From the NCBI GenBank assembly GCA_037447605.1, contig CM074814.1, forward strand, positions 1 to 64,000: a stretch of 64,000 nucleotides of DNA, given 5' to 3'. This DNA comes from Zygnema circumcarinatum SAG 698-1b (taxonomy: Eukaryota; Plantae; Zygnematophyceae). The translations under genes and the position numbers were made by a program. This document shows positions 1,521-21,018 of this stretch, one piece after another. How positions within the stretch are numbered: position 1 is the first letter of the stretch; each line of letters opens with the position of its first letter. The notes below the pieces were generated by a model that was given only the letters and a program-made list of their open reading frames with translations, made no database searches and had not been told where the DNA came from.

Positions 1521-1849
1521 GCGTCGTCCGTACAATCGCGCGCCTTCGGTACGGCCGCGCTCCTTCCATTCAAGCGCATTCCGCGCACCCCCTTTGGTGC
1601 GATCTAAGCCTAAGCCGTAATCCTACGACCCTAGACCTTCCATGGACCTGCCGTACATTGCCCTCACAATACGGGCACCCCCACCCCCACAAACTTGTTA
1701 GAAGAAAAGATGTCATGCCAGTCAACGACTAACAGTTCAACTCCGAGCGCTACATCGTCTTTTAGGGTTTTTACCCATTGACAGTGCCACCACCCGACAA
1801 ACAAGTTTCAACGAATCGGCATTTAGGCTTTTCTCATCTTTAATTCAGC

Positions 1850-3950
1850 ATTCTCTTTTCCAAATGATGAACAAAGCAGTAACCAAGAAGCTTATTGTAA
1901 GCATATCATTTATTGGTTTATTAATAAACCATAGGCCAAGGGAGTTTCCGAATGCTAAAGCTAAGGCGCGCACCAGTGGAGTCGGCCTCCACGTTGCCCA
2001 AGTCTCCCGCGTGGCAGACTGTGTCCGTGGGCCCTCCGTGAGTGAGTCCAAACGGGTCATGTCATCATCCATCATTTCTACTTCTTGCTGAACTTTGCGA
2101 ATGAAGGTTACCAAATCAACTCTCGCTATTGCTATGTGTTGTGGAAAATATCAATAATTAATATAGGTAGATGGTAACTGTCGTACAGCAGCAGCCAGTT
2201 CTACCGGAATCTTGAACCTTTACTCAGGAGTAAACATAGCCAGAAGGATTGATTAAACACTTGCATTGCCGTCCACTGGGGAGGGCAGAGGATAAGAAAC
2301 CCGAAGGAACCTCTAAGAATCCCCTAAAAACCCCTTGAAAACCGCTTAAAACCCCCTTGAAAACACCTAGAAAGCTTAAAATCCTAAGAACCCGAAAAAA
2401 CCCTAAAAAATCCTAAAAACCCTAAGCAGTCTCAAAAGCTGCAGGGAAGTCACGTGCCCCAGCAAAGCCCTGAGGCCTATGCTCCCGAGTGCTATCAGCA
2501 CCAACCGCAGAAAGAAAGGATTGGCAAACGTGATTGCACGCCGGCCCCCATGTAAAGTGGCAAAGTGCCGCAAAGCAGCATATTCATCCTTCACGTCCCT
2601 TCCCACAAGGACAAATAACAACTGCTGACAATCGAGCAGTCCTCTCTCCAATAGCTCACTGTCCAGGCTATTCCCTTTCTTACATATCCAATCCCGACCC
2701 TTGATTAAAACTGCCTACTCAAAAGTCGCATATGTTGTAACCACATTTTGACTATTCTGCTCCTAATTGGATGGCTGCCGTCCATCACTTGACATACTCT
2801 AAAAACATCCATCCTCAGCTTTGAAATACTCATTGTGAAGGCAAGTTATTAGGTACACAACAATCGAGTCAACTAGAAATAAAAACGGATGTCACGCAGG
2901 GCATCAATTCCTTGGAGAAACGTCTAAGAGCCCCCTGGATATCGTGCATAAGCGCAGACCACGCTTTCAAACAACCTCCTTTTCCTTTTTTTCAGCACTC
3001 TCCAACTCTTTCACCTCCCCCAGTTTATCCTCAATTTCCTTGCGGAGCTCCTCCCTCCAAAGCTCTTTCCGCGCTCCTTGTTCCTCTTCCTCAGCCTGCA
3101 CAAATCAACGCAAATCAACGCAGTGTGCACTTGTCCAGGAGATTAATTTCGATGAAATTTTGGAGATCTTAACACGGGTCAGACACGGAAACCAATCAGA
3201 GCAATACACGTGGACCTAAAGTATGCTTGCAGGCTGTCACAAAGCACTAATGTATTCTTAAAACTTCTAAACAACACACTGCCTACAACATGACCTGTAA
3301 CACACTAATCCTCCCTATTGTGGCAGTGCGCAATTTTCAATTCCCATCCATAGGGAATGTCCATGCCATGCCCACTCACACTAGTGTAGATCCAATGCTG
3401 TGTGCCATTTCCTCCAGCATTGCAATATTCAACACTCTCATAGTATCGATCCTGCAGCACACTATCTGAAACTGTAAGCATACACGCAGAGGAGCCAATG
3501 CAAAAGCCTAAAACTACGTTCAACAATCACCATACGGCCGATTAGGGTTTACAATCTCAGTCAATTTTTCACGACTTCTCAGAAACTTCGATTTCCACAA
3601 ATCAACATGCCTTTGACCCGAGTCAAAAACCGCACAATCAATTCGCACACAGCCTGCGTCCGGCTTGATTGGTACGTTAAGCTTTTGGCAAAGTGTGAAT
3701 GATGGAATCGGCGGCAAAACCGCCCGCCCGCTCTGTGGAATCGATGCCTGTGCTACTGACAGGGTTTGTAGGGCTAAACACCACGAGGCCTTGAAGCATA
3801 TGATTTGAAGCGAGGCTGCTACATTCACAGGCATCCGCAGCTATTTCTGGCAAACTTACCACACCAAAGTGCAAAAGAGAAGCCGATTCATGGATGCCGA
3901 CGTAGATTCATAGAAGCGAAGACGACGGCTCCCCATGAGGATACACAAAC
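1850..3950 (-). mobile_element. Probable decayed KDZ (Kyakuja-Dileera-Zisupton) transposase remnant
   Basis: Broken minus-strand reading frames. ACECSSLASNHMLQGLVVFSPTNPV (~3770-3830) resembles the CxC1-type motif C-x-C...L..GL...SP..P. AWTFPMDGN*KLR (~3325-3365) resembles the KDZ catalytic DGNFxLxR motif. There are multiple stops and no intact splice structure. Confidence 0.35.
2321..2426. repeat. Degenerate telomere-like (CCCTAAAA-like) low-complexity tract
   Basis: CCCCTAAAAACCCCTTGAAAACCGCTTAAAACCCCCTTGAAAA...CCCTAAAAAATCCTAAAAACCCTAAG. Confidence 0.4.
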
Positions 3951-4529
3951 AAATATCATATTTACAGCCCCCAGTACCTTTAACAAGTCAGGCTAAACCA
4001 TGGCGACAGGCCAAAACATAGTATCCTATTCTTGTATGAGAATGAAAGGACATTTGAAGCATTCCTAGTTGCTCTTGGTCCAGTTTCTCCATTACAGCTC
4101 CACATGGTTTCGTCAATCCTTTCGACATTGGTGCCTTCGAACAGAAACGCGCGGTTTAAATTTAAATAATTTTATGAAAAATTAATAACTTCACCACCAT
4201 CCCTCTAGTCGCAAAGAATTCGTGGACTATAGTACGGTATCCCCTTGTACGGTGGCCCGGGCGTTCCAGCCGTACGGTACGGACGGATGGCTTGCGCGGA
4301 TCGGGATTGCCCGCGCGGGCGTCCGCCAATGGCGGCCTCCCCGCGGGGAGCGCAACGCCGCGCGTCGCACGTGCGGGCCGCGCGGCTCCCTCCGCCCTCG
4401 CCCTTAGGCCTTAGAGCGTGCGGAGGTGCGCCCACCGCCGTTCCTCTCCTCTCCTCTCCGCTCCCCTCCTCTCCTCTCTCTGCACCCCCTCCGACGCTGC
4501 GCCACGCTTGCTCTCTGCCTCCCTCGGCC

Positions 4530-7500
4530 ATGGCGCAGACCCTGTCGGCAGCTTCCCAGCTGCAGGCCGCCCGACTTCCCGCGCGGCCCGCCATTCTCGG
4601 CTCCGATGCTGCCGCGCTGTGCCCTGCGCGGTCGGTGGCTCCCGGCAAACTCGCTGGAGCTCTGAGGGTTAGGGCCGAGCAGAAGAGTGAGAACGGATCG
4701 GCGCAGAAGGCTGGAGCTGTGGCAGCTGCCGGAGCAGTGGCCTCGTTCCTGGCTGTTCCTAGGTCAGCGTTGGCTGTTGATGTGGAGGCTGTGACTCAAG
4801 TCTTCAACCAGGTATATCGCGCTCTTTAAAATCCATTTATAACAGACATCGCCTATCGTTCTTGAAGTGCGCAATGATTGAGGTGGCTTTCCGTAGGTAC
4901 ACGATTGCATTCCTAAGCGGAATTTTGGCGTCAAGATGTTCGCTTTGTCGCTCATGTCCGGGCCGGAAACTGTCAAGGATGCCTGGGCCTGTCAAGTATA
5001 CGTTTATCAGGGTTGCAGAAATGGTCGGGGCTAAACAGTCTTTAAGTTCCCAGTTCGTTTTGAGCAAGAGTCATGTCTAGTGTGGGATATGTTTTGTAGA
5101 GCAAGAGCTGGCTAGAAGTTGGTTAGTCATGTCTCTGCAGTGCTCCCAATTGCAAATTTTCATTTTTAATTAGATTATGATTTTTGTGTTGGTTCAACGG
5201 ATGTTGGTCCTCTTGTCCGATTCCATGTATACGATGTGACATTTTCCAGTTCACAAGACAAGTCGTTAATGAAGTGAACCACGATCCATGTCTCCTTGTC
5301 GGCCAGTCTCACATTCGTCCCGGAAATGTTAATGTAGGTGGAGGAGTTTTCGAAGGAGGCGGGAGAGACGGCAACTGTCACATACGAGTATTTGAAAAAC
5401 ATTCTCGACCAGTTCATTGAGGCAGCGAAACCGGTGGTAGAGGCAGCTACGCCAGTGGTCCAGCAAGCTGCGCAGAAGGCGCTGGAGCTGGCCACTCCCG
5501 TGGCCGCCGATGTCGCCTCCAAAGCAAAGCAGGCGCTGGTGGACGCCGGCGTTGACACGACGCCAGTCTTTGAGGCTGCAAAGGTGCGGACGGTGAACCG
5601 TCCTGGGAGCGCCCGGGCCAATGACTGGCTTATCATCACGGAAAAGCTGAATGAGTGGCATTGATCTGCCATCTGTGATATATTAACAAACAGAAGAACA
5701 TTTGTGTTTTTGTGCTCCTAGTCTGGCAGCGACTGCCCCACTATCCCCTCTTATGGATTTTAGGGTTCTGGAGTAGTTCGGTTGCAGGTTGCCTGATGGG
5801 AACAGAGTTTAGCTTATGTTTCTCCTCTGATTAAGTCACTCTGGTTTTCCCCTAAAACCGATTGAACATCGTCGTACCCTTCATTTACTCCCCAAAATCT
5901 GCTGATAACTGCTGTTTATCCAAGTCTATCTTATCTTTCTGATTACATTTTAATCCGACATCTATATAACTGCTTCCAGCAGTCCTCTGTACATCATTTT
6001 TTTGGTGAAAGCTGCGAAGGGGCTCTGAGCGCAGCTGTTCCCCGGAGGGTGGGTTGGGCAGACGGCGGCGGAGGTGGCCGGCGGCGTGAGTGCGCAGACG
6101 GGGGCGGCCCTGACGGTGGCGTCGCCGTACGCGGAGTCCACCCTGGAGGCCCTCCTCGCGCAGGAGCCCGCCCTGCTGGCCGCGGGGGCGGGGGGACTCG
6201 CACTCCTCTACCTCCTCGCTCCCTCCATCCTCTCCTCCCTCGCCTACTCTGCAAGGGGCTTTGCAGGTGTGTATCGCCAACTCACCAGCCGGTCTGCTGC
6301 TGCTGCTGCTGCTCCCTGGCGTCATATTAGGCTCTCTTTTGACACGCGAAAGACATTCATGTGGATGTTTTCTGACAGCCTGGTACGCCTTGACGTTGGT
6401 CCTTAAAGGGCTGCCTTTATAAGCAAGACTTCCTTTATATTCGTCGGAAGCGCGTGTATACGTTGCAGGGCTGTAACTAATGCCGACGAACCTATCGCCG
6501 CCATCTGTCGACAGAAGACTGACATTCTTGTTACTGGTCGAGGAGCACTGCCGCTGCCTGCTGAACGGCTTGCGATCTTGATGCGTTTTTGTGTCCTGTC
6601 TAGGGGCGAGCGCGGAGGGGCGCTGACTGAGTAGTGGAGGCGGCGAGGGGGGGTGCAGGCGAGCTGACGGCGGCGCAGACCCTGGACCTGCTCTCCACGC
6701 AGGACTACCTCCTGGTCGACGTGCGGACGGAGAGGGAGCGCTCTAAGACGGGCATCCCCGCACTCCCTCGGAGCGCCCAGAAGAAGCGCTTCACAATCCC
6801 GTAAGCAGGCCTTCGACTCTCGCATGTGAGATATGATGCTGAAAGTTTAGAGTCCTTAACTGCTCGTGGTCACTGCAGTAATTTGCCCTTTTGGGCAGTG
6901 TATACGGATGCTTCTTTGCTGGGATGTCTCCCACAAAGCTGATTGCAAGGTATCCCTCAGAAGGATATGCATTGTGTAGGGCATGCCCTCGCTTGTCAAT
7001 TATCTCAACCTGCGTGCTTGAGCTGGTGGGAGTGATATGCCGGCCCTATTGTTCTTCTCCTCGACATTAAAATAGCAGGGTGCAGTCTTGTGGCTCCCTA
7101 GGAGACAGCACGTGTGGGCATCCACATGGTCTACAAGTCTTTTTGTTTTCACTTTTTGTAAAACTCCCTTTTTTATCCTTCTTCTTGCCCAAACGATAGC
7201 GCATATCCCCGCTGCTGCTATATGCAGAAGATATTCCTTGACTTCCTCCCCCCCCCAGTCCTTGCTTCTGCAACCTCTGGTTACTGTGTTAGGGTGCGCA
7301 TGATGGACCCGTTTCCGTTCTTCTTTACTGGCTCCGAGCTAGGCATCGCTCGCTTTAGGCCTTACTTTCTTTTCTTACCTGTAATCCTCTTGAATAAGGA
7401 CAACGGTCCTTCCTAAAGCCCCGTAAATGAAAGATGGAAGCTTCTTGCTGATCTCGTCTCTTGATGGGTTTTTAGAAGGTACATGGATGACGTGAGCTTC

Positions 7501-8579
7501 AAGATTACAGATGCATGGATTTCTTCCCTTCTCACTGAGTGCGGAGGATTGAGAAGCAAGTTCTGTTCTGTGCACAGTTAACCGCGGTTGAGGGTGCACA
7601 GGGTGGAGGACCTTCCCGGCAAGCTGCGGGGGCAGCTCCGCAACGCGCGCAAGGTGGAGGCGGAGCTGACGGCGATCAAGATCGCGGCCTTGAAGCGCAT
7701 CGGAAAGGGCTCGCGGATCGCCATCCTCGACTCGTAAGCGCCCCTCCTCCTCCTCCTCCTCACTGCTCTACTCGCCATCAACACTTCTCTCTCACTTCTG
7801 AAATAATTCACAACCCACCCATGCATTTCAAACAAAGGCGGGCCATCCGATGCAAACCTTCCGCCCATGATTTAAATCATGTTCGTCCTGAATTGAACTC
7901 CTTTCTGTCCACGAAAGGTTCGTGCTCAAAAACGAGCACGTGCAAATCCATTCCTGGGATTTTTATGTTGAGTGACTGATCATACCAATAACCACACCAA
8001 TAACCCGGATAACCTTGTCACGATTTCTTTTGTGTCCTAACTTGCTGTCAGCGATCGTGTCCCTGAAACAAGCTGAAATCTTCACTGCATCGCTGTAGAC
8101 CATCAGCTACAGTGGTTTATGCCATTTCCTCCTTGTGAACCGAAAGCTCCAAACCAGGAAAATGCAGAGTACGAGAAACGGTGTTTGTTGTAAGGCGATT
8201 ACATCAGCAGCGTGACAACGTGCTGGTTGTAGAGTGCCATTGACTGGAAGTTGATGCTGAATGTGCCCCTCTCTCTCTCTGTCTGTCTGTCCTTTGCAGC
8301 AACGGGAGCGTGGGCAAGTTGGTGGCGCGGTCCCTGAGCAGTCTCGGCTTCCGCAACATCTTCGTGGTGAAGGACGGTACGGACGGCGGCGCGGGGTGGG
8401 TGCAGAGCCAGCTGGCGATGGAGGGGTACAGCGGGGGCCTCTCCCCCGCGGAGGTCCTCTCGCCCTCGCGCGTCATCCCGGCGGCCTCGCGCTTCGGCAC
8501 GCGCCAGAGCGCGGGGGAGGTCGTGGACGTGCCCGCGGGCCGCAGGGGCTTCCTGCTGCCGGGCGGGGCCGAGGACTGA
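4530..8579 (+). CDS. CAS: Chloroplast calcium-sensing receptor CAS (thylakoid, rhodanese-like domain), 6 exons
   Basis: Exons 4530-4811, 5338-5583, 6062-6266, 6659-6800, 7602-7733 and 8300-8579 are all GT-AG and in phase. Product has a transit peptide, a TM segment (GAGGLALLYLLAPSILSSLA), GELTAAQTLDLLSTQDYLLVDVR, KVEAELTAIKIAALKRIGKGSRIAILDS and VLSPSRVIPAASRFGT, matching plant CAS. Confidence 0.96.
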
Positions 8580-9599
8580 GGGAGGAGAAGGCACTTTTAC
8601 TATCTTGGTTTGGGACAGTTGTGTGATTGGACTGAAATGGAACCCACGGGTCCTTGCAAAGGGGGGCCCGGTAGTGGTTGATGTAGCTTGTTCTTACTTT
8701 ATCTATGGTAGCAAAGGTTGTGTGTCAAGTCGTTGCGCTGCTAAAGGCATGCGTTTCTTGGCTTTTGGCAGCTAGGAGTGCTGAATTAGTCAGAGTAATG
8801 GACGAGATTGTTTTGAAGTCGATTCCACTGAAAAAAAATCACAAAAGCATATTTTTGTTCAAATGACAAGGAGAGGTGTTGGCATATTGCAAAGAAAGAG
8901 TCATGCAATGTCGGTTGAATTTTGCTGAAACGAGTATTCCTCGTATCGCAAAATGGGATATTCACGCTCCCCGACAAGATCCCGAATCATATCTTGCGCT
9001 GTTTGCGCGTTGATTGGCTGAAGAGACGAACTCGAGGGTTCATCGCAAGGCTTCGCTGTTCAACTTCTGCATCATCACCTTTCTGTGATTATTCTGTGGT
9101 TTGGGTCTCACGAACGGTTCAGCACTTCCCGCTCTCTCATGTCTGCTCGCTGCACTCGGCAGGAGCTTGTGTTCGCGCGTAGTTGCAGATCCACAAGCCA
9201 GCCCCATGGCACACATTTACTTCGAAATGATTCGTTGCTTCTTGCTGACATCACCCTTTCGAGAAAAAATGGCATGTAATATGTGCAATATTGCCTGGTA
9301 CCGATGGACTAGCTCCTGCAGGGTTCTTTGAAAGCACCACTGCACCAGTGACTCAACTCAACAGTCCCACCTGTGATGTGCGAATCTGAAATTCTCATGG
9401 CGTGCTTCCCTCTTCCCTCGCCTCGTCTGAAATGAACCCGCAAAAGACCCGACCCGACCAGGTGTCCTCCCTCGCGCGGAGGCAGCGGCTCTTTGTCGTC
9501 CCGTTCCGTTCCGTTCCGTCGCGGTTTGCGGCAGGCCCTCCCTCGGCCGTGTCGGCGCGCGCCCCTCGATGTCGGCGCCGGAGGCCTGGACGCATAGCG

Positions 9600-9640
9600 G
9601 CGCGCCACGTGTCGTGTTACGTGGCATTTTGTCACGTAGC
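9600..9640. promoter_or_regulatory. G-box/ABRE-like ACGT cluster upstream of the tyrosinase gene
   Basis: GCCACGTGTC (CACGTG at 9606-9611), TTACGTGGC and GTCACGTAG lie within ~40 bp, ~150-190 bp upstream of ATG 9790. A (GAGGC)n run at ~9749-9787 precedes the ATG. Confidence 0.4.
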
Positions 9641-9789
9641 GGAGTGAGGGCGCGCGACGCGATTGGACCGCGTCGGGCGTCGCGCAGACGAAGGGAGGCG
9701 AGCCGCGGAGACAAACGAAGTCCAGGGCAGGGCGGAAGGGCGGAAGGGCGAGGCGAGGCGAGGCGAGGCGAGGCGAGGCGAGGCGAGCA

Positions 9790-12700
9790 ATGGCAAGGAG
9801 CGTGGCCCCCGAGCCGTCCGCCCGCGTCCTCTTCGCCCTCTCCGCTGCCGCGATCGCCCTGCTCTTCAGCCTCTCCCTGCTCACCGCCCCTTCCGCCTCT
9901 ACGGCATGGGGGAAGGATCACACCCGCGCTACCACCTTCCGAGATGCTCTTGTTCCAGAAGGAGTTGGAGCGAGGAGGTCGCTGCTGTCCAAGGCAAGCA
10001 GGCTTTGGATTGGAAATCTGCGTAAAATGCAGTTGGAAGCTGGATCATTTTGAGAGTATGCTGAATAGAGTAGAGAATTATGGCAGGAACAAAGCAGGAC
10101 TCGTAGCAGAGCCAAATGGATGCAGATTCCTAGCTGCTTATTTCCCTCGCTTCAAGTGGCAGGCTTGCTGCCAGAATGACTGAACGCATGCCGGGGGGGG
10201 CCGGGGCGTGCAGACAGAGAGCACGGTGGCGACGCTGGCGGCGGCAGAGGCGCAGAGCTACAGCGGGTGCCGCCTCGCCGTGGTTACGCCCAACGCGCCG
10301 GCGCACGTGACGGTGCCACTGGCGGAGCCGCACCGCGCCACGCTCTTTGGTGGGGCCTCCTCGGATCTCCTAATGCTGCGCAGCTCTCCCGAACCTGCTT
10401 GCCGATTGCATTCCTTCCCTGTTGAGTCTCTCTTCTGATTCGTAGGGCCTCTCGTTTGACTCATATTCTTAAACTCCCACGCCCAACAGCATGCAAAAGT
10501 TCATTCTCGTCCCCAATGGTGGACTCATTCATGTCATTCAATGTGTGCCTGGATGCCTGATGATTGGTCCCTGGTCACTCTGTCGATGTCGAGCAGTGCA
10601 GGGGAAGCGCTTGAGCAGTCAAGGTAGTCCTCGCAGCTGCTTGAATTCTGCGTGCCTCTGACAAGGAGGCCATTGCGGGCGGCATTGCAGAGCTGTCGCT
10701 GAGCTGCTCCGCGGGAACGGAGCCGAGCGGCGTGGTGCTGCTAGCCGAGGGCCCGGACGGGGCGACGGCCGCGGGGCTGCGCGTGACGTTCACGTACACG
10801 CAGGCCGGCCCCGCGGAGCTGCGCGTCTACGCCTGCCTCGCGGCCGACCTCGGGGACGCGCCCTGCTCCCTCCAGCGCAGCCGTCAGGTGGCCCTCCCTC
10901 CGTCCTTCAAGCCAACTCTCACTCCCGTCCAGATGATTTCGGGATGCTTAGGGTTTCGGGGAATTGGGGGTTTCAGGGCGCTTTGGTCTATATAAATGTC
11001 TAGAGTGTTTGGGAATTTTGAGAAATTTGATGCTTTGGGGTGTTTAGCTGAGGTGAGGTGAGATGAGGTGAGGAGCTGCCACGCGCGCTGATGTTTTTAG
11101 GAGCGCTGCGCAGACCTTCACGGTGCGCGTGGCCGTGCTGTATGTGAGGCGCGAAGTGCGCAGCCTCTCCAAGGACGACGCGCAGCGCTACTTCACCGCC
11201 CTGAAGACGCTGCGAAACTACACCACGCCGGAGGGCCAGCTCATCTACGGGCCAATGTAGGTTGAAACGAGCTGTGTTTCTGCTGGCGGCTTCCGCTGCC
11301 TCGACATGCCCCCTGCCTACCTAGAGCGGATGTTCGTCTGAGCTGACGTTGCCTTGCACATCCCCCGTGGCTTTGGCAGGTTCCGCTCGTACTCGGAGTT
11401 GACAACGCGCCATATGGCAGTCGCCTGGGGCGAGTACGGGCAGTGTAACATGGGCCACAATGGACCCGCCTTCCTCCCTTTCCACCGCGCATTTGTTCGC
11501 GAGTTCGAGCTCGCCCTTCAGGTGGGCTCCTCCTCCCGACGGCCGCTCCACTCAGCGGGCGATCGGCCGGCGCCCGCGCTCGTTCTGACGGTGGGGGAGT
11601 CACTGGGCCGTCTCTGCAGGCCGTGGACCCGTCCGTGGCGTCCGTGTACTGGGACTACATCGCGGACGGCGACCTGGACTCGCCCTCGGAGTCCGCCATC
11701 TGGAGCGCCGACCTGTACGGCAGCATGGTCGGGGACCCCGAGGACCGCTATATCGGTGAGCGCCAGACGCGGGCCTCACTCAGCGCGGCTCGGCTCGGCT
11801 CGGCTCGGCTCGGCTCGGCTCGGCTCGGCTCGGCTCGGCTCGGCTCGGCTCGGCTCGGCTCGGCTCGGCTCGGCTCGGCTCGGCTCGGCTCGGCTCGGCT
11901 CGGCTCGGCTCGGCTCGGCTCGGCTCGGCTCGGCTCGGGTCGGGTCGGGGCCCTCTGCCGCCCGCCGCTGCCTCTGACGCGCGGGGCGGGGCGGGGCGCT
12001 GTGGGGGGCGGCAGTGAAGGACGGGCAGTTCGCGAACTGGACCATTCCGAGCGGCGACGAGGCGGTGATGATGGCGGCCTACACGTGGGGCGAGCTCGGG
12101 CCCACCAACGTCGTCAACCCCTACGGCTTCCTGCGCTCGTGAGGGCTGCGGCTGCCTGCCTCCCCGAACAGACCCAAGCCGGTTGTTCTGAAGCCGAGCA
12201 GCGGCAAGCAAGTCCCTCCGACATGCATGCATGCATGCATGTGCATGCCTGCCTGCTGATGCTGATGCGTTGCGTGCAGGCCGGAAGTGAACAATCCGTC
12301 GCCGTACCTCACGCGCATGGGCAACACGATGGGCGATTCTCTGCCCAGTCGAACCAACTGGGCAGCTTGCTACGCAGAGACGTACCTCGGCGAGGTCATC
12401 TCCTGCATCGAGAAATTCGGTGCAGTGACGCCCTCCTGCTGCCTGCCTGCCCTCGCTCGCGCATGGCCGCTTCACAGTCAGCCCAGGCTGGCCTGACGCG
12501 ACTCGCCATTTGGATTATAGGGAGGGAACCTCTGTAGCTCATCTGAAGTTAATGATCTGTCTGCAGTGCACGTTTCGGCCCACAACATCATCGGAGGAAA
12601 CACTGGGATGCCCTCCTTTTCCGAAATGGCGAACGAGATTGATTGTTCAACTTACGACTCGGCTGCGGAGTGCGCAGAGGCATTTGCAATGTTTTACTCA

Positions 12701-13646
12701 TATGGACTTGCAGTACGGTCGCTGGGAGTGCGTGACGGGTGCATAACCTGTGACAGGCAGTGTGCGAGCCTCTCGGACGACCCCTCCTTGTGCTCCTGCC
12801 AGTGCGTCTCTCAGGTACGGCCCCGCTCCGCCCTGTTCTGTGCGCGCGCTTGCAGCTGCTTGGCCGCGTCTTGGCGCTGAAGGGAAGGGGGAGGGGGCGG
12901 GCGCTGGGCAGGCTCCTGACCGCTGCTCGGCGTACTACACGATGCTGCGCTTCTTTGCGCGGACAGACATTCCGGATGGTTGGGAGTTTGCAGGCTACGG
13001 CCTGTGTACGCCTGACGCTTATGTGGGCGATTATGCAGGTTTCACACTGTTCCCCTCCACATTTTGCAGGAGTTAGCACGACTCACAGTCGGGAGAGGGA
13101 TGCATTTTCGTAACTTGTTTTTGACTTTTATTATGCATTATGCTGATTCTTTCTCATATCAGCTTCGTTGTCAATCAGCCTTCGTCCTGCTCGAGACCCC
13201 TCTAAGGCCCAACCCTGTCACCGCTACTGTGTGCAGATGTGGCTGCGTCGGTCAACGATCCGATCTTTTGGCCCCATCACACAAATGTCGATCGCGTTTT
13301 CGCATCGTGGCGGCTCCTGTATCCGCAGGGCAAGTGGGAGGACCTGAACTTCACGTACCCGAGTACGGACAACAGCGTGTTCCCGGACTACTTCAGCGCC
13401 ACCAACATCGTCAACGCCAGCGCGGCCTGGCCGGGCGTGCTCGCGCCCGGGGACGGCAACCCCAGTGGTGTGTGCGAGGGCCATGGGCTGTGGGACCAGA
13501 CGCTGCGCGGGACCTTCTCGGGGCTCTTCCGCAGCCTGGACGCCGCCACGCCGCACACCAATCTGGGCCTCCTGCAGAGCGTAGACGCACAGCTCTTCTC
13601 GCCCTTCGAAGCGGACTACGTGTACGACACGTACGAGGTCATGTAA
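9790..13646 (+). CDS. Secreted or signal-anchored tyrosinase (type-3 di-copper oxidase), 11 exons, not a plant PPO
   Basis: Exons 9790-9993 (GC donor), 10214-10349, 10691-10887, 11114-11256, 11380-11521, 11620-11755, 12015-12138, 12280-12419, 12567-12814, 12912-13038 and 13237-13646 are in phase. Motifs: YVRREVRSLS; CuA RH...GHNGPAFLPFHR; SVYWDY; LRSPEVNNPSPYLTR; CuB HVSAHNIIGG...SVNDPIFWPHHTNVDR. N-terminus is hydrophobic. Confidence 0.92.
11786..11935 (+). repeat. (CGGCT)30 perfect pentanucleotide microsatellite in a tyrosinase intron
   Basis: 150 bp of uninterrupted CGGCT inside intron 11756-12014. Confidence 0.97.
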
Positions 13647-14857
13647 AGTCTGAGAGGCAGAGTATGGGCTGGTCCCCTGTTCGGTTCACCCTTTACCCAT
13701 CGCACACAGCTACGGAGGCTGTCTTTGCCTTCTCGTCGCTTTTTTTAAATCATCGTTAATTGAGTTATGTGAACACACGGCTGGGTGCGAAAGCATGCCA
13801 TGCGAAAGTACGCTTCTAGGCGGGCAGCCGACTGTGTATTGCAAAGCCGGAAAGCATTGATTGTATCAAGATTGTACTCGTTTGTACGGTGTACATACAG
13901 CAGTAGTTGTGTATAGCTGTGTAGAGCAGGTTAGTGCTCCCCTCGTGTAGATTTGGGCACAATTTCTCTAGAAGGATAGGTAGGAAAACGGCACCATTGT
14001 CGGTCTTTTTAGGGCGATTTGTTGGCAGAGGCGGGGGAGGCTCTCCGTTGCTGCGTCATTATGAGGGCAGGCGGACGGCAGCAGGCGGAGGTGCATTCCA
14101 ATGGCGACGGAAATAGGGATAGAGAAGGTCGAAATCGACCCGGAGCAGGCGAGATTGAAGGGGCGAGCAGGCAGCAGGCCACTCAGAAAGCAGGGGAGGG
14201 CTTACAAAGAGTCAATATCTATTCCGTAGAGAGGCCTCTCGGATTCATGCATTGCAATTTGTTTAGAATCTTGTTGGAAGTCTAATGAACGCTTCCTTGT
14301 CAACAAACGGCGCTATCGTGCTTGCTGAACAAAATGAAAAGGAAAGTGTCCTGTAATGTTCTGCAGTCCTGTGTCCTGTCCTGAGTGTGCTGTAGCTGCC
14401 GTGTGCGTATATATGCCGATGGTCAAATTTATTCACCACTCATGACACATCAGAACACCATAGGAAACAATTGACGCTAAAGTGAACAAACACACACAGG
14501 GAACTGCAGGCCTGCACAGCCATCGCAGACTCGCACACGCTACGGCTGACCTAAGCAAGAAGAGAAAAGCGACTTCCAACCCCAGAGGGCTCAGGAGCTT
14601 CCGATGCAAAGGCTGCCATTTGAAGGAAACGTTTCAAGAAAGCAGAGCGCAGCAGCGACAACAAGGATCGGAAGCTCATCCCATTGTCTTGAAGCCCGCA
14701 CTGCGTGCCTCCTCACGGTCCATACAAAAACTAGGCGGTGGCCACTGGTGTGCCACGGCAAACATCTCTCCTCACAGGCATAGACTACGCTCCAAAACGA
14801 TCCAATCATCCGCGTAAGCTATTCCACTGCATCCTATTGGTGCGGCCTTCGTGCCCC

Positions 14858-17151
14858 TCAATACTCGTCAAAGTGAATAGCGCCTAGTTTCCAGACCACC
14901 CAGACTGTTGCAAACATGAGCATAGAGCTTGCAAAAAAGGACAAAATCAGAAGGATTTGCCCAGAATCCAGACTAAACCTCCACTTTTCTGCCTCAATCT
15001 CTTCTGCTGTCCTTCTCGGGTCATCAAAAATATTGGCCGGCGCTCTTGGCTGACCAGGCTTAACCTTATTCTCGAATTTATCTTCCTTAAACGCCTCTAA
15101 CAATTTCTTGCCCCCCGCAAACGAGGGGTTTGGTCGAATTGAACCCACTGCAGGCTTGGGAGAAGTGCCTTTCAACGCGGAAAGAGGATCTTCCCGTTTC
15201 GGCGCCTGAAAGGCCTTCCCGGGAGGAGATCCGAATGGGCTCTGTGGCGACTGGGGGGAGGGAAGGGTGGTGGGGGGTGCAAATGGGGACCTGCTTTTGG
15301 TCTCCGCAGAACTGGGCGGCGGTGACAACGACTCTCCAACAACAGACGCCGCTGAAGGGGCAGAAGGAGAGTTGGAAGGGGGGGAGAGACCCTTCAGTTC
15401 TTGCTCTCCTCCAGCTGCCCCTCCTTTAGCAGCTACCCGAGAGGAAAGCTTTCCAGGCGTGAACGGATTCAAAGGTAGGGCTGTGCCATTCGAAGATTGA
15501 GGTGCTTGTTGTGCTCCCATCCTCTGGCTGCCCGGCCCCCCTGGACTGCCGCCGGTGCTACTTCCCTCCGGGCCATCATCTCCACCAGCAGGACTGCTGC
15601 CGCCAGGCTCCGCCTGCTGCCCCTCTATGGCTGTGGCTCTCACCCTGGAACACCGTCTCCCGTTCGTCAAACTCGTTCCGGCCTTCAAAACAGCAGCTCT
15701 CAAAGGCGCCTGCTCTCCACAAACTCCGCATCCTAAACCCTCCACGCTGCGCCATGGCTGACGACTGCCCAAGCCCTGCATGCCACGACGCCCCTTCTCC
15801 CGATTCTTGAGCAAAACCATCAGCTTCCTCCAACGTCCTCCCACCCCCCCCTGCCCCCCGTCCGGATACTACCTTGCCTCTCCACGCAGTGTTTAGATTT
15901 AGCCCTTCCAACATTCTTCAACCACTTTACGTCAGAGATAAGAGCTGTCCTCTCAGGGAAAACAATAAACGTGCATCCCCTTCATTGGGATATAATACAT
16001 CGGTAACTGACCCATTTCATCGGCAATACATTCCACTAAATCATCCGGAACAAGCACATTGATCCACTGAAAGCATTCATCGTAGTAATAATATACGGCA
16101 GCAATAATATACATAACTGAAATTTTGAAACCTCTACCGAATAAAAAAAAAGCTGAACATCAGAAGCAGACCACTGGCTCACATACTTGCTAAAAAATAA
16201 CAGATTACAGATAACAGATTTTCCACCAGGCGACTACTTGCGAATCGCATCCTTACGAAACGATCAAGGCCAAAGCGCCTCTACCATTGCAGCTCGCGGA
16301 AACACCTGACACTGGCTTCCAGTTCTTCGCTTCAAAGAAAGGGTCCCCAGGTGACCAGAAACACGTCCCCTGCTTGTTGCTTCATAAACAAGCAACTGCC
16401 ACGTGCTTCCGCTCTGGAAGCGGCACCTCAAAACACTACGCCACAGACCATAGAAGAATTTCCCGTCTCGCGACACTACACCCCTGCAGCACTATGACGC
16501 ACCGAGGATATCCGCCCTCCCCTCCACACGCCGATTGCGCGAGACAAGAGGTCGGTCCCCGCAGTGCTGCCATTGGACTTGCAAGACCCTGACGCTCCCG
16601 CTGTGCACTGCTGCAAGCATTTGGCCCTGTGCGCCGACGAAGAGGGTCCGATTACGAAAACGACCTAGACTCTGCAAAATAAATAGAACGCCACGGCCAG
16701 CTAAAGGCAACGCGCGGGAGTAGAATTTCCCGGAGCCCACGGAGAGTGACGACGACGCGGGGAGAAATCTGTGAAAAAGCTCAGAGACTTGGGGAAGGGC
16801 GCGGGTCACTGGGTTTCACGCGTACTGGCGCGCTGAGAGAGCGAGCTTGTACAGCCACGATGGCGACGGCGCGCTTGGCGATGCGAACATTGAAGGGCTG
16901 CCACGAGCAGCAGCTCCAGGGCTCGGAGCATAAACCCTCGGTTTCTGCCTGAGCTCCAGCGAGCAGCCCACCGTGCCCGCATGCATCCGCGCGCTAAGCC
17001 CCTGGACGTCTCCCAGAGCTGAGCTCACCAGAAAGGTCGGCCGAGCGCGCGCTTCTCTCACGCCGCGTGCAGACGCCGAAAGCGAAGGCTCCCGCTGGAG
17101 CGCCACGCGGCGTGACGGCAGCAGCGAGGCGGTGTGGGCGGCCATGGCCAT
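14858..17151 (-). CDS. Probable plastid-targeted, Pro/Ser-rich protein with one C-terminal TM helix, unknown function, 2 exons
   Basis: Exon 1 17151-17029 (MAMAAHTASLLPSRR...PTFL|gtgagc) splices in phase to exon 2 15709-14858 (cag|APLRAAVLK...). The N-terminus is transit-peptide-like and the C-terminus is DSGQILLILSFFASSMLMFATVWVVWKLGAIHFDEY. Confidence 0.75.
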
Positions 17152-17495
17152 GGCGGGCGGGCGGGCGGGCGGGCGGGCGGGCGCGGGGCGACGACCGGCG
17201 CACGCATCGCAGCCCTGGTCGCGCCCGCCCGCCCTCCCTCCGCGATCCGTACGGTCTTTAGGGATCAGGATCACTGTTGCGAGCGTGCAACTGTACGGAC
17301 ATAATGACTCGTGACTAAGTGAGTCACGGACTCACGGAGTCACGGGTCACCCGACTCCCCTAGGCCCGAGGCCCTACGCCCTACGCGGCTACCTACCTAC
17401 CTACCGTACGGGTGCGGAGTGCGGTGGGAGAGGGCGCGCCTCCGCTGAGGGAGGGAGGGCAGGACCGCACGGGCGGACGGGCGTGCGGTACAGTA

Positions 17496-17903
17496 GGGAG
17501 CAAGCAGGGAGCAGGGAGCAGGGAGCAAGCAGGGAGCAGGGAGCAGGGAGCAAGCAGGGAGCAGGGAGCAGGGAGCAAGCAGGGAGCAGGGAGCAGGGAG
17601 CAAGCAGGGAGCAGGGAGCAGGGAGCAAGCAGGGAGGGAGCAAGCAGGAGCAGGAAGCAGCAGGGAGCAGGGAGCAAGCAGGGAGCAGGGAGCAGGGAGC
17701 AGGGAGCAGGGAGCAGGGAGCAGGGAGCAGGGAGCAGGGAGCAGGGAGCAGGGAGCAGGGAGCAAGCAGGGAGCAGGGAGCAGGGAGCAAGCAGGGAGCA
17801 GGGAGCAGGGAGCAGGGAGCAGGGAGCAGGGAGCAGGGAGCAAGCAGGGAGCAGGAAGCAAGCAGGGAGCAGGAAGCAAGCAGGGAGCAGGGAGCAGGGA
17901 GCA
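17496..17903 (+). repeat. Minisatellite of GGGAGCA (7-mer) and GGGAGCAAGCA (11-mer) units
   Basis: ~410 bp of mixed 7- and 11-bp units. The final A of the last GGGAGCA unit is the A of ATG 17903. Confidence 0.95.
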
Positions 17904-18202
17904 TGGCGGCCGCGGCAGCGACTGTTGTCCTTAGTAAAAGGGGGCACGAGAAGAAGGCCTCCAAGGAGGACGTTAACCCCTTCAACATTACGAAAAAGCC
18001 CTCTCCCAAAATGGAAAACCACGATCCCTTCAACATCCGACACGCGGAGGTGGCGGGCGGCGCATCCGTAGTCTCGAAGGAGGGTAGTAATGAAGCGCAA
18101 CCTTCCGGCGGAATGTTTCCCGGATCTCACTTCAGCCTGCATGCAAAGCGGGACCTTGGCGACAAGGACGACTCCTCTCCTCTTCTGAAGCCGTCCAAGT
18201 AG
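17903..18202 (+). CDS. Small (99 aa) hydrophilic, probably disordered orphan protein
   Basis: ATG in GCATGG context opens a single ORF MAAAAATVVLSKRGHEKKASKEDVNPFNITKKPSPKMENHDPFNIRH...DDSSPLLKPSK*. It is divergent from the gene starting at 17151. No family recognised. Confidence 0.5.
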   Translation: MAAAAATVVLSKRGHEKKASKEDVNPFNITKKPSPKMENHDPFNIRHAEVAGGASVVSKEGSNEAQPSGGMFPGSHFSLHAKRDLGDKDDSSPLLKPSK

Positions 18203-19792
18203 TGCAGAGGACGGATTATTTGCTTCTGTCTGGAGGGAGCTCGACGAGTGAGGGCGTGTCTCGATAAAGGGGCCTTTGTAATCACAAACCGGGAGGTAGG
18301 TTTTAGCAAGACAAAGTGAAGACCCTCTGCCATCCAAATGTGTTTCCCAAAGAAAATAAGATATGGCGCTCGTCTGTAATAATAGTTTTCTGCGAAAGAC
18401 CAGCGACAGAGGAGGTGCCGGGCGATGCCGCCATGCATTCGTGCCTGCGCATAAGCTCATAGGTTGGCTTTTGCGGCCGCTCTCAAGACGTTCAGGGCGG
18501 TGGTGTCGGCTGCCGGCAGAGCTGGGCCGCCGAGCAGCTCGCTGCGCAGAAAGCGAATATGGCGGGGCTACTGTCCCGCTCGTGCGTTCAGACTCTTCAC
18601 TACTCCAAACGTCTCTTGTGTTATCTTCTGTAATGTCTGCGCTGTCTGTCTGGTGTACAGGTTAGTTCGTGTCAGTAGGGAGAATAAATGACTGCAACGT
18701 TATAGTTTGCTAAATTGCCACTGGCTCATCCAGCTAGCTCTTACTGCTTTCCCCTTTTTATTTTTCGACGCTGTTTTGTCACACTTTTGCCCCTTGCATG
18801 CCGCCTCCAACATGAGGTTGGGAGGGCACGATTGTTAAACGGAACAAGGGAACTCTGCGGCTCAATAGCATCTCAAGCTTGTCTTTTCAAGCATTTATTT
18901 TTTGCTGAAGGAACATTTCCGCTGCCGCATGTTTTCTTGATTCTGATTGAGGTGGGACTCAGGTTGTGACTTCAAAGTGTTTTTTGGAAAACTGTTATCT
19001 AAGTTAGTCCGTCAGTGAACAAATGGTTGAACTGTCTGAACTGGCAGAACTCATGCGGCGATGGATGCGGTGCCGCGAGGTCCTGTTTTGCCAGAGCGCA
19101 CTGCAGTCGGTGACTTAAGTTGTGTGTCCAAGTCAGCCTGTCAACTCAGATTCTGCCATCATTGCCCAAAGCACTGCGTGTTGTCGGGCTCTGGCTAGGT
19201 TAGGTCTCGTGTGTGTGTGACTGAAGCGGCAGTGGATTCAGGGTTGTTCGGCGTGTGGGAATTCAAAACCTGTGAGGGTTTTGCCCGAGCAGTTTCATGA
19301 TTGAATTGAAACTTCCATGGGCTTCAACTGAACAAACCCAAGCAGTTGGAGCGTTCGACACGTCTGAGAACTTCGCATAGGAACAGAAAATCTGACCAGC
19401 ACCTGGCGCATGTTGACGGTTAATCAACGTAACAATGAAAAGATGAGACAACATTCGTATGCACTTCTAGCACGATAGCAGAGACCACATATGAAAATAT
19501 CCCATAATTATTACATTTCGGAACCATCCAAGGCGAAATTAAAGGTCCTTAGAAATTTGTTGCAGTTTGGTCGTTTGACAGTGCCGTCAGCAGCATCGGA
19601 AATAAACGCTTTGAGGTTCCGAACATGAGGTTTATTTGCGAGTGGCGAGGGTCCGGTCCGTGCTAATGCCCAGGCCTCTTGTCCACTGGCTTTGTCGTGA
19701 AGTTGCAGACCAGACCAGACCAGACCAGACCAGACCGAGTCAGGTAGTAGCGGTTGCGAGCCGTCCGTCGGTCCGCACTTGCGGGTCGAGAC

Positions 19793-20167
19793 TAGGGATG
19801 GCTTAATTACGACTATATAATCTATATTATATTATATAACTGTGACGACTAAATAACGGCTGTTATATAATACTTTACAACGCCTTTACAACACGTACGG
19901 TCGTACGGTCATACGACTGTACGGTATTATGCGGTGACGACAGAGTGAACCAGACGGACGCATTTCGCAACGCCAACGCCAAAACGACCTAATTTTGGTA
20001 TGGTACGACCGTACGACCGTACGAGTACGGTCGTACGGTCGTTAATTGTTCAAAACGAGTGGGTATAATATATGTAATAAAATGTTTTACTTTGTACTAT
20101 ATTACTACTTTTAAACCCGTTGTAAAGTATATAATATAGTCGGACTTTATAACGCGGGCCATCCCTA
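19793..20167. mobile_element. Non-autonomous hAT-superfamily MITE (375 bp) with 8-bp TSD
   Basis: Perfect 10-bp TIRs TAGGGATGGC (19793-19802) and GCCATCCCTA (20158-20167), similar to Ac/Ds-type ends. Identical 8-bp flanks GTCGAGAC at 19785-19792 and 20168-20175. AT-rich interior with subterminal inverted repeat TACTTTACAACG/CGTTGTAAAGTA and CGTACG(G/A) repeats. Confidence 0.92.
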
Positions 20168-20694
20168 GTCGAGACTAGAGAGCCGCTCGGACCAGCGCAG
20201 CGCTTGCTGCACGCCGACTGCCGACTGCCGACTGCCGACTGCCGACCGCGGTCGGTCCAAGGGACGGATATTGGGTCATGAGATATATCGTATCGCATAT
20301 TATCGTACAATGCCGATAAATACTGCGATTTGCGAGCGACACTCTCTTTCCTCGGTCTCGGTCTCGGTCTCGGTTCGGTTCGGATCGGATCGGTTCGTTT
20401 CGGTTCGGTTCGGTTCGGCTCGGTTCTCTCCGGCTCGGCTCGGTTGGTTGGTTGCTCCGCCGGCCGCCCGCGGGGGGCGCGCGGTTGGCTGCTTGCTGCT
20501 GCTGACTGCTGGAGGAGAAGCAGAAGCAGGAGCAGGAGCAGGAAGTAGCGCGCTAGGGTTTCGCCGGGTGGAGAGCTGCCCTTCCTTCCGCGGTGCTGCG
20601 GGCGGCTGGGCTCGGCTGGGCTGGGCGGGGCTGTGTACAGCGCTGCGCGTATCTCGCTGGTGCAGGGGCGCGAGGGTCTGTTCTCTGCTGCGCG

Positions 20695-21018
20695 ATGGCG
20701 AAGGGGTCGCAGAGCCAGGCGGCTGTCTCCGTGGCGCGCGGTGGCGCGTCAAGCGGCGCCAGCGGCTCGGCGCGCGCTCCTCCCCCGGGCGTGGTGGCGA
20801 GGGGTGCGGGCCCTGCAGGCCTTCGGAGAAGGCGCACTGCTGGAGGTGGGGGGGGAGGCTTTAGCGGGCAGGGGAACAACATGCTGCGGTTCTATACAGA
20901 CGATGCTCCTGGCCTCAAGATCACTCCTACTGTCGTCCTCGTCATGAGCCTCTGCTTTATTGCCTTTGTTACTGCTCTGCACGTCATCGGCAAACTCTAC
21001 GGCTCACGGTCGTCATAG
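20695..21018 (+). CDS. SEC61B: Protein transport protein Sec61 subunit beta
   Basis: Single coding exon MAKGSQSQ...LRRRR...[40 protein letters not shown], with the canonical [11 protein letters not shown] motif and a C-terminal TM helix. Confidence 0.98.

What the first reader, a model, noticed from the sequence alone, without database searches (positions are those of the whole stretch)
9790..13646. Secretory-pathway tyrosinase of a non-plant type in a streptophyte genome
Seen in sequence: all six Cu-ligand histidines are present, with an N-terminal hydrophobic signal/anchor and a beta-rich segment before YVRREVRSLS. There is no plastid/Tat presequence and no PPO-type DWL or KFDV domain. From memory, the motifs YVRRE.R.L, G...YGP, V.P.V...YWD and LRSP..N.NPSP..TR are typical of tyrosinase-like proteins in stramenopiles and haptophytes. 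Inference: horizontal acquisition, or an ancient lineage lost in land plants. If the host is a Zygnematophycean, this is a candidate enzyme for oxidative phenolic pigments (purpurogallin-type compounds are known from some glacier Zygnematophyceae) or for wall cross-linking.
Basis: partly seen in the sequence, partly recalled or inferred. Interest (0 to 1): 0.72.

Follow-up and report, generated by a model that had tools for sequence, protein, structure and literature searches.

The report
Secreted non-plant tyrosinase, giant-virus kin
This is a real, transcribed 11-exon gene of a streptophyte alga for a secreted copper phenol oxidase; it is not the land-plant PPO type but belongs to an uncharacterised "long" tyrosinase family that conjugating green algae share with a brown alga and with giant viruses.

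Summary
Window 9790-13646 (+) is an 11-exon gene for a 668-aa type-3 copper protein. Spliced transcript contigs from four studies carry it.

- **Protein:** all six Cu histidines are present. It has one N-terminal hydrophobic signal/anchor, a PKD-like beta-sandwich before YVRRE, a 134-residue Cys-rich insert between the 2nd and 3rd CuB histidines, and a 121-residue tail ending YVYD.
- **Not plant PPO:** there are no PPO1_DWL or PPO1_KFDV domains. Plant PPOs match only at the last CuB motif. Bacillus and Streptomyces tyrosinases are the nearest solved structures.
- **Not a recent transfer:** the gene has ten spliceosomal introns. It sits inside a well-supported clade (96/99) of many paralogues, at least eight of them from Mesotaenium endlicherianum.
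- **Wider family:** this clade joins Ectocarpus "tyrosinase-like protein 2", intronless 670-705-aa genes on giant-virus contigs, and a few metagenome sequences in one family (99/96). All share the architecture. Their branching order is unresolved, so the origin (old algal gene or virus-mediated transfer) stays open.
- **Function:** phenol oxidation in the secretory pathway is inferred, not shown.

The scan's first readers noted similar tyrosinase genes on other pieces of this genome; I did not check those.

The stramenopile lead is supported for Ectocarpus only. Haptophytes were not tested.

The parts
9790..13646 (+). Whole coding region: 11 exons, 10 introns, 668 codons plus TGA
9747..9787 (+). 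(GGCGA)x8 perfect repeat in the 5' UTR, directly upstream of the ATG
   Evidence: the X5 transcript contig extends about 37 nt upstream of 9796
9790..9993 (+). Exon 1 (aa 1-68); followed by a GC-AG intron (9994-10213)
   Evidence: RNA-type contigs of 4 studies; splice shift resolved
9826..9882 (+). Hydrophobic signal peptide or signal anchor, residues 13-31
   Evidence: the only segment with mean Kyte-Doolittle above 1.6; paralogues P0003, P0005, P0010 and P0012 have classical signal peptides
10214..10349 (+). Exon 2 (start of the N-terminal beta-sandwich; AEPxR/K motif)
10691..10887 (+). Exon 3 (rest of the PKD-like beta-sandwich)
11114..11256 (+). Exon 4 (YVRREVRSLS and first helices of the tyrosinase core)
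11380..11521 (+). Exon 5: CuA site with H238 (11411-13), family-invariant Cys249, H253 (11456-58), H262 (11483-85)
   Evidence: Pfam PF00264 E 9.9e-6
11620..11755 (+). Exon 6 (YWDY region)
11786..11948 (.). (CGGCT)x32.6 microsatellite inside intron 6 (11756-12014)
   Evidence: it blocked read laying
12015..12138 (+). Exon 7
   Evidence: loose end of contigs at 11755 continues at 12015
12280..12419 (+). Exon 8 (LRSPEVNNPSPYLTR motif spans the exon 7/8 junction)
12567..12814 (+). Exon 9: CuB H409 (12569-71), H413 (12581-83) and first part of the Cys-rich insert
12912..13038 (+). Exon 10: second part of the insert; the alternative donor at 13071/13072 is rejected
   Evidence: P0002 reads GDYADVAAS across the junction with no gap
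13237..13646 (+). Exon 11: CuB H547 (13278-80), 121-aa C-terminal tail ending YVYDTYEVM, stop codon
   Evidence: Pfam PF00264 E 8.5e-9

Best explanation
The locus is an intact, transcribed nuclear gene for a 668-aa secretory type-3 copper oxidase (tyrosinase/catechol-oxidase superfamily).

Shown:
- The gene structure and the spliced transcripts.
- Six Cu-ligand histidines.
- One N-terminal hydrophobic signal/anchor.
- A PKD-like beta-sandwich, then a tyrosinase core closest to bacterial tyrosinases.
- A 134-residue disulfide-rich insert between CuB His2 and His3.
- A 121-residue tail with a terminal YxYD motif.
- Membership of a multigene clade known so far only from Zygnematophyceae-type sequences.
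- This clade, Ectocarpus 'tyrosinase-like protein 2', giant-virus ORFs and a few metagenome sequences form one 'long tyrosinase' family, distinct from land-plant PPO.

Inferred:
- The protein enters the ER and is loaded with two Cu ions. It binds O2 side-on, as other type-3 centres do.
- It oxidises o-diphenols, and perhaps monophenols or trihydroxyphenols such as gallate or pyrogallol, to quinones. It would do so in the secretory pathway, cell wall, mucilage or vacuole.
- The quinones then cross-link or polymerise non-enzymatically.
- The N-domain, the insert or the tail may shield the site (latency) or bind a matrix.

Origin: the gene has been resident in this algal lineage for a long time. 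How the family came to be shared with brown algae and giant viruses is unresolved.
For: - Spliced contigs from 4 studies.
- PF00264 hits on exons 5 and 11 and on 10 of 10 family members.
- Six His and the spacing table.
- A 66% gap-free alignment to transcript protein P0002.
- AF2 model of P0002: pTM 0.75. Foldseek gives Bacillus megaterium tyrosinase TM 0.73-0.76, then Streptomyces, TYRP1 and mollusc hemocyanin.
- Profile against PDB: bacterial tyrosinases E 1e-29 to 1e-21, plant PPO 3e-4 to 3e-3 and only at the last CuB motif.
- Family sources: Mesotaenium endlicherianum models and transcriptome contigs.
- Careful ML tree: family 99/96, zygnematophyte clade 96/99, window + P0002 100/100, Ectocarpus + NCLDV 100/100.
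- Giant-virus genes and their viral neighbours.
- ESM Atlas by shape: the only whole-length match is an NCLDV cluster, TM 0.66 over 535 residues.
- N-domain fold.
Against: - No enzyme assay, localisation or condition-specific expression data exist.
- Cleavable signal peptide versus signal anchor is undecided. The hydrophobic core is 19 residues, and no SignalP was available.
- The residues usually used to predict monophenolase activity are not canonical: Val follows CuB His1, and there is no clear water-keeper Glu. Substrate class cannot be predicted.
- The structure was predicted for a 66%-identical homologue, not for the window protein.
- The host species was not identified independently.
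- The family's range rests on limited searches: one exon-based HMMER search and word-index searches.
Confidence: 0.8

Rival explanations
1. It is a divergent member of the canonical streptophyte/land-plant PPO (catechol oxidase) lineage that has lost its DWL and KFDV domains.
For: The literature reports tyrosinase-domain-only PPOs in streptophytes that still group with plant catechol oxidases (PMC10541563). The last CuB motif does match plant PPOs weakly.
Against: Plant PPOs and aurone synthase match the family profile only over about 30 residues, at E 3e-4 to 3e-3. Bacterial tyrosinases match in two stretches at E 1e-29. No plant PPO is among the top 50 Foldseek hits. There are no DWL or KFDV domains. 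The architecture (N-domain, 134-aa CuB insert, YxYD tail) is shared with Ectocarpus and giant-virus proteins instead. No plant PPO sequence was available to put in the tree.
Confidence: 0.02
2. It is a recent horizontal acquisition, an endogenised giant-virus fragment, or an assembly contaminant in this genome.
For: The closest whole-architecture matches outside algae are giant-virus genes. The distribution across eukaryotes is patchy.
Against: The gene has ten spliceosomal introns with the genome's uniform GCAG acceptors, and GC3 is 0.83. Spliced transcripts occur in 4 studies of the same organism label. The gene sits in a clade with at least eight Mesotaenium paralogues that diverged before the window/P0002 split. 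The viral genes are intronless and only about 30% identical. Of 247 ORFs taken from the viral loci, only the tyrosinase ones match the window.
Confidence: 0.03
3. The family reached Zygnematophyceae (or brown algae) by an ancient transfer mediated by giant viruses, or the viruses captured it from an algal host; it is not a vertically inherited green-lineage gene lost in land plants.
For: There are three well-supported subclades: zygnematophyte, Ectocarpus + NCLDV, and metagenomic. No chlorophyte, other streptophyte or land-plant member was found. Twelve viral contigs of up to 280 kb carry the gene next to core viral genes.
Against: The order of the subclades is unresolved and the tree is unrooted within the family. 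The zygnematophyte clade is not nested inside viral diversity. The viral sample is one narrow clade (72-100% identity). The searches could have missed distant green-lineage members: Ectocarpus itself was missed by the exon-11 search.
Confidence: 0.3
4. The protein is not a phenol oxidase but an O2-binding, Cu-storage or structural protein, or a catalytically dead paralogue.
For: Type-3 centres also occur in hemocyanins, and mollusc hemocyanins score highly. Some Mesotaenium models lack CuB histidines. The large insert and tail could block substrate access.
Against: All six histidines and the surrounding motifs are intact here and in most family members, including the viral ones. The nearest solved structures are active tyrosinases. 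The high hemocyanin scores come from summing 8 repeated units.
Confidence: 0.1

Closest known systems
Mesotaenium endlicherianum gene models (e.g. ME000264S04326 = P0003, ME000146S01009 = P0031) and transcript protein P0002 (run SRR8128907)
   Same: They have the same domain order, the same conserved cysteines, a CuB insert of 134-149 residues and the same C-terminal tail. The window protein is 66% identical to P0002 and about 40-55% identical to the Mesotaenium paralogues. They form one clade with 96/99 support.
   Different: They are unnamed, uncharacterised models. Several (P0009, P0010, P0034) lack CuB histidines, possibly through gene-model errors. P0002 has a longer, anchor-like N-terminus.
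Ectocarpus siliculosus 'tyrosinase-like protein 2' (P0036, 666 aa)
   Same: It shares the AEPxKP beta-domain, YVRREIRSLS, Cys at HA2-4, LRSPWNNDPSPFMTR, a Cys-rich CuB insert (155 residues) and a YVYD tail. It aligns end to end.
   Different: Overall identity is only 25-27%. The CuA motifs differ (DHWHQGAG and HMA against MGHNGPAF and FHRAF). It groups with the giant-virus genes, not with the zygnematophyte clade. No function is published in the library searched.
Giant-virus (Nucleocytoviricota MAG) tyrosinase ORFs, 670-705 aa (L002-L015)
   Same: Same length and architecture, with a CuB spacing of 121 residues. They are the only whole-length structural match in the ESM Atlas (TM 0.66). The CuA half is 33% identical to P0002.
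   Different: They are intronless and sit among viral core genes (Erv1/Alr, RNAP Rpb3/11). They are closer to Ectocarpus (28% over 633 aa, E 4e-75).
Bacillus (Priestia) megaterium and Streptomyces tyrosinases (PDB 3NM8, 1WX2)
   Same: They are the best solved-structure matches to the catalytic core: TM 0.73-0.76 by target, profile E 1e-29 to 1e-21, six His.
   Different: They are about 280-300 aa with 22-23 residues between CuB His2 and His3. They have no signal peptide, beta-domain, insert or tail, and no Cys at HA2-4 (one search shows the same short spacing in the outgroups).
Land-plant polyphenol oxidase / catechol oxidase (PF00264 + PF12142 + PF12143; e.g. PDB 6ELS, 2P3X, 4Z0Y)
   Same: It has the type-3 copper centre and the DPxFxxHH CuB motif.
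   Different: Plant PPO has plastid/thylakoid targeting and DWL and KFDV domains, all absent here. Sequence similarity is limited to about 30 residues.

Membership tests
Type-3 copper protein, tyrosinase central domain (PF00264) | Three CuA histidines (HA1, HA2, HA3 with H-x8-H) | tested here: met
   H238, H253, H262; columns invariant in the family alignment
Type-3 copper protein, tyrosinase central domain (PF00264) | Three CuB histidines (H-x3-H ... H) | tested here: met
   H409, H413, H547
Type-3 copper protein, tyrosinase central domain (PF00264) | Pfam model hit above the gathering score | tested here: met
   Exon 5 scores 26.5 bits and exon 11 scores 36.5 bits against a cut-off of 22.6. 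Homologue P0002 scores 88.7 bits.
Type-3 copper protein, tyrosinase central domain (PF00264) | Helical-bundle core superposable on solved tyrosinases | tested here: met
   Tested on the 66%-identical homologue P0002 only: TM 0.73-0.76 to B. megaterium tyrosinase
Type-3 copper protein, tyrosinase central domain (PF00264) | Cu-dependent oxidation of phenols by O2 | not testable with these tools
   Needs recombinant enzyme
Land-plant PPO / catechol oxidase | PPO1_DWL (PF12142) middle domain | tested here: not met
   No hit in any exon or in 10 family members
Land-plant PPO / catechol oxidase | PPO1_KFDV (PF12143) C-terminal shielding domain | tested here: not met
   No hit
Land-plant PPO / catechol oxidase | Bipartite plastid transit peptide with thylakoid twin-arginine signal | tested here: not met
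   By inspection only: the N-terminus is a short charged stretch followed by a 19-residue hydrophobic core at residues 13-31, with no RR motif
Land-plant PPO / catechol oxidase | Groups with plant PPOs by sequence or structure | tested here: not met
   Against the family profile, plant PPOs score E 3e-4 to 3e-3 over the CuB motif only, whereas bacterial tyrosinases score 1e-29. Plant PPOs are absent from the top 50 Foldseek hits. No plant PPO was in the tree.
'Long' algal/giant-virus tyrosinase family (Ectocarpus tyrosinase-like protein 2 type; unnamed) | N-terminal disulfide-bonded beta-sandwich ending in YVRRE | tested here: met
   The fold is PKD-like: Z 8.2, rmsd 2.8 over 84 residues, tied with other Ig-like folds.
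'Long' algal/giant-virus tyrosinase family (Ectocarpus tyrosinase-like protein 2 type; unnamed) | More than 110 residues, Cys-rich, between CuB His2 and His3 (22-33 in ordinary tyrosinases) | tested here: met
   134 residues here; 114-180 in the family; 22-33 in eight outgroups
'Long' algal/giant-virus tyrosinase family (Ectocarpus tyrosinase-like protein 2 type; unnamed) | Invariant Cys four residues before HA2 | tested here: met
   Cys249. It is present in all family rows that cover the site and absent from 7 of 8 outgroups.
'Long' algal/giant-virus tyrosinase family (Ectocarpus tyrosinase-like protein 2 type; unnamed) | Tail of 90-160 residues ending in YxYD | tested here: met
   121 residues ending YVYDTYEVM
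'Long' algal/giant-virus tyrosinase family (Ectocarpus tyrosinase-like protein 2 type; unnamed) | Falls on the family's side of a supported branch | tested here: met
   99/96 for the family and 96/99 for the zygnematophyte clade
Secreted protein with cleavable signal peptide | N-terminal signal peptide with a cleavage site | tested here: inconclusive
   A hydrophobic segment is present with small residues after it (APSASTA). At 19 residues the core could be an uncleaved anchor. No SignalP was available.

The most novel reading that the evidence does not exclude
The long tyrosinases are a lineage that giant viruses have carried between distant algae (brown algae, conjugating green algae). In Zygnematophyceae the expanded family would be the missing oxidase that turns gallate- or pyrogallol-type phenols into purpurogallin-like sunscreens, pigmented mucilage or resistant zygospore-wall polymers. 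[quoted passage not shown]
Probability: 0.12. Interest if true: 0.8.

Novelty: new variant of a known kind. Interest (0 to 1): 0.56.

Why it matters
Reviews in the library searched say either that algae lack PPO (PMC7010833) or that all streptophyte PPOs are catechol oxidases of the plant type (PMC10541563). This gene shows otherwise. [quoted passage not shown]

The biosynthesis of zygnematophyte phenolic sunscreens is stated to be unknown (PMC11156808), and these enzymes are concrete candidates that can be tested by expression and assay. The shared architecture with giant-virus and brown-alga genes also gives a clear case for studying gene flow between viruses and algae. Finally, a tyrosinase with a 130-residue insert inside the CuB site is of interest to enzymologists.

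Tried and rejected
- **First read laying.** Only 9600-11785 could be laid, so the 3' half has no read support.
- **Long form of exon 10** (donor at 13071/13072, also in phase). Rejected because P0002 shows no 11-residue insertion there.
- **Automatic splice-site scoring script.** Too strict and not useful; the junctions were read by eye.
- **Word-index protein searches with P0002 and with alignment A1.** They returned only five family members, probably because low-complexity words filled the candidate list. Only the region-restricted search with P0003 reached Ectocarpus.
- **ESM Atlas with exon 9.** No usable hit.
- **Viral scan with A1.** The patterns were too family-specific and found nothing.
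- **A3 on metagenomes, A3 on viral contigs and A1 on prokaryote genomes.** Mostly generic tyrosinases matched through the DPxFWxHH motif. No prokaryote shows the N-domain, the insert and the tail together.
- **Pfam on ten flanking ORFs.** Nothing.
- **No paralogue in the window**.
- **Paper searches** for giant-virus or zygnematophyte tyrosinases and for the run accessions. Nothing relevant.
- **Copper-chaperone role for the N-domain.** Suggested by a tied match to CrdA. Not adopted, because the candidate His residues are not conserved.
- **Joined model.** The joined spliced protein was never handed to a search, fold or database tool.
Full report
**Gene model**

The region 9790-13646 (+) holds short stop-free blocks in all three forward frames. 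Contigs from runs of four different studies, all under one organism label, held about half of the sampled words of the stretch, as expected for spliced RNA. Laid on 9600-11785, they gave five exact joints and a loose end that continues at 12015.

After shifting within the ambiguous bases, intron 1 is GC-AG (9994-10213) and introns 2-6 are GT-AG. Exons 7-11 were placed by GT-AG rules and reading frame.

- The exons are 9790-9993, 10214-10349, 10691-10887, 11114-11256, 11380-11521, 11620-11755, 12015-12138, 12280-12419, 12567-12814, 12912-13038 and 13237-13646.
- The coding sequence is 2007 nt, giving 668 aa.
- Every acceptor is GCAG. Exon GC is 0.65 and GC3 is 0.83.
- The model aligns without a gap from residue 82 to 666, at 66% identity, to P0002, a protein from a 2.5-kb transcript contig. 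There is no indel at any junction, and this settles the short form of exon 10.

The joined model was built only inside scripts, from window.fa, for local alignment and trees. It was never sent to a search tool.

**The protein**

- PF00264 hits exon 5 (CuA) and exon 11 (end of CuB). No other Pfam family hits any exon.
- The Cu ligands are H238, H253 and H262 (H-x8-H between the last two), and H409, H413 and H547.
- The only hydrophobic segment is residues 13-31, preceded by a single Arg and followed by APSASTA. This is a secretory signal or signal anchor, not a plastid/Tat presequence. Paralogues P0003, P0005, P0010 and P0012 have ordinary short signal peptides.
- The protein has 18 cysteines and four N-x-S/T sites.
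- Between CuB His2 and His3 lie 134 residues. Eight ordinary tyrosinases used as outgroups have 22-33.

**Relatives**

A HMMER search of 1.84 billion representatives with exon 11 found only 27 proteins at E <= 1e-3. About 13 of them share the whole C-terminal tail. Their sources are Mesotaenium endlicherianum gene models (P0003, P0009, P0010, P0012, P0013), transcriptome contigs (runs SRR8128907, ERR2041114, ERR12684109/111) and a EukProt Trinity assembly. Word searches added further Mesotaenium models (P0031, P0032, P0034). All ten aligned members carry PF00264 only, with no PPO1_DWL or PPO1_KFDV.

Outside this group, a search restricted to the CuA half of P0003 found two more sequences:
- a 438-aa metagenome protein (P0035, E 4e-30);
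- Ectocarpus siliculosus "tyrosinase-like protein 2" (P0036, 666 aa, E 3e-21).

The Ectocarpus protein aligns end to end. It shares the AEPxKP beta-domain motif, YVRREIRSLS, LRSPWNNDPSPFMTR, the Cys-rich CuB insert and the YVYD end. No haptophyte sequence was recovered, so that part is untested.

**Giant viruses**

The ESM Atlas feature search with P0003 pointed to Nucleocytoviricota clusters of 664-685 aa (a lead only). A scan of IMG/VR with alignment A2 then found intronless 670-aa ORFs on giant-virus MAG contigs. Their neighbours are Erv1/Alr, an RNA polymerase Rpb3/11 subunit, Lon protease and SNase. Twelve viral contigs of up to 280 kb carry copies that are 72-100% identical to one another.

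- The viral protein is 28% identical to Ectocarpus P0036 over 633 residues (E 4e-75).
- It is 33% identical to P0002 over the CuA half (E 9e-34).
- By shape, the AF2 model of P0002 has one whole-length match in the Atlas, an NCLDV cluster (TM 0.66, 535 residues aligned). Animal tyrosinases match the core only (TM 0.37).
- Prokaryote genomes gave only ordinary short tyrosinases.

**Tree**

A careful ML tree (26 rows, LG+C20+F+G4; a quick 37-row version is) gave these supports (ultrafast bootstrap / SH-aLRT):

| Branch | Support |
|---|---|
| Long family apart from ordinary tyrosinases | 99/96 |
| Zygnematophyte-type clade (13 rows) | 96/99 |
| Window protein + P0002 | 100/100 |
| Ectocarpus + giant viruses | 100/100 |

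The order among the zygnematophyte clade, the Ectocarpus/virus clade, P0035, L017 and P0017 is unresolved. Rows left out of the careful tree were three partial proteins, four very long-branched outgroups and four near-identical viral rows. No plant PPO sequence was available to include.

The window gene lies among Mesotaenium paralogue groups. The family therefore diversified before these algae split.

**Relation to known tyrosinases**

- The family profile matches Bacillus megaterium and Streptomyces tyrosinases at E 1e-29 to 1e-21, in two stretches. Plant PPOs and aurone synthases reach only 3e-4 to 3e-3, over the last CuB motif.
- Foldseek ranks B. megaterium tyrosinase first (TM 0.73-0.76 by target), then Streptomyces, TYRP1 and mollusc hemocyanins. 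No plant PPO is in the top 50.
- The N-terminal domain folds confidently (pLDDT 85) as an Ig-like beta-sandwich. The best match is PKD-like domains (Z 8.2, rmsd 2.8, 84 residues), tied with many other sandwiches.

**Origin**

A recent transfer, a viral insertion or contamination is unlikely. The gene has ten introns with the host's splice signals. It belongs to a multigene clade. Transcripts occur in four studies. No other viral-locus ORF matches the window.

Whether the family is an old gene lost in land plants or was moved long ago by giant viruses cannot be decided from an unresolved, unrooted tree.

**Function**

Function is inferred from the intact type-3 centre and the secretory signal: oxidation of o-diphenols or related phenols to quinones outside the cytosol. 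Substrate class and latency cannot be predicted.

**Literature**

Papers in the library state either that algae lack PPO (PMC7010833) or that streptophyte PPOs are all plant-type catechol oxidases (PMC10541563). A 2026 survey found algal PPO only in Chara, using the three-domain definition (PMC13242956). A 12-type classification has no such algal/viral type described (PMC11803259). One zygnematophyte transcriptome paper mentions "a tyrosinase" in passing (PMC11156808). No paper on giant-virus tyrosinases was found. The family is therefore present in databases but appears undescribed.

**Earlier notes of this scan**

First readers noted at least four other tyrosinase loci on other pieces of this genome, one of them with a Cys-rich insert of about 145 aa in CuB. 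I did not check those loci. They fit the multigene picture.

**Verdict**

This is a new variant of a known enzyme kind, of moderate interest. Interest would rise if the virus link or a pigment or wall role were shown.

Noticed in passing
window 9747-9787: A perfect (GGCGA)x8 repeat lies in the 5' UTR, directly upstream of the start codon. Read laying skipped it as a repeat.
   Followed up: partly
window 11786-11948: A (CGGCT)x32.6 microsatellite (99% matches) lies inside intron 6. It creates long false ORFs with ARLGS/SARLG runs on both strands.
   Followed up: yes
window 9994-10213: Intron 1 uses a GC-AG splice pair. The other nine introns are GT-AG, and all ten acceptors read GCAG.
   Followed up: yes
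window 10095-10719: Run X2 has unspliced contigs across the intron 1/exon 2 border and all of intron 2. This is either intron retention or DNA carry-over in that library.
   Followed up: no
window 11196: Run X2 reads T where the window has C, which changes Thr to Ile in exon 4. It is probably a strain or allele difference.
   Followed up: partly
L002-L015 (IMG/VR giant-virus contigs), e.g. L003:3752-5764: A clade of giant-virus MAGs carries an intronless 670-705-aa tyrosinase with the same N-domain, CuB insert and tail. In L003 it lies next to Erv1/Alr, RNAP Rpb3/11, Lon protease, SNase and DUF3431 genes. No paper on it was found in the library.
   Followed up: partly
P0009, P0010, P0034 (Mesotaenium endlicherianum gene models): These paralogue models lack CuB His1/His2 or His3. 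They may be pseudo-enzymes or mis-predicted exons.
   Followed up: no
L017:441-2055 (marine metagenome contig Ga0115001_10038732): This looks like an intron-containing eukaryotic relative with a much shorter CuB spacing (41 residues) but a similar tail ending PYKYAEP. It may be an intermediate form of the family.
   Followed up: no
window 1-9700 and 13700-22000: Ten long ORFs flanking the gene gave no Pfam hit, so the neighbouring genes were not identified.
   Followed up: partly
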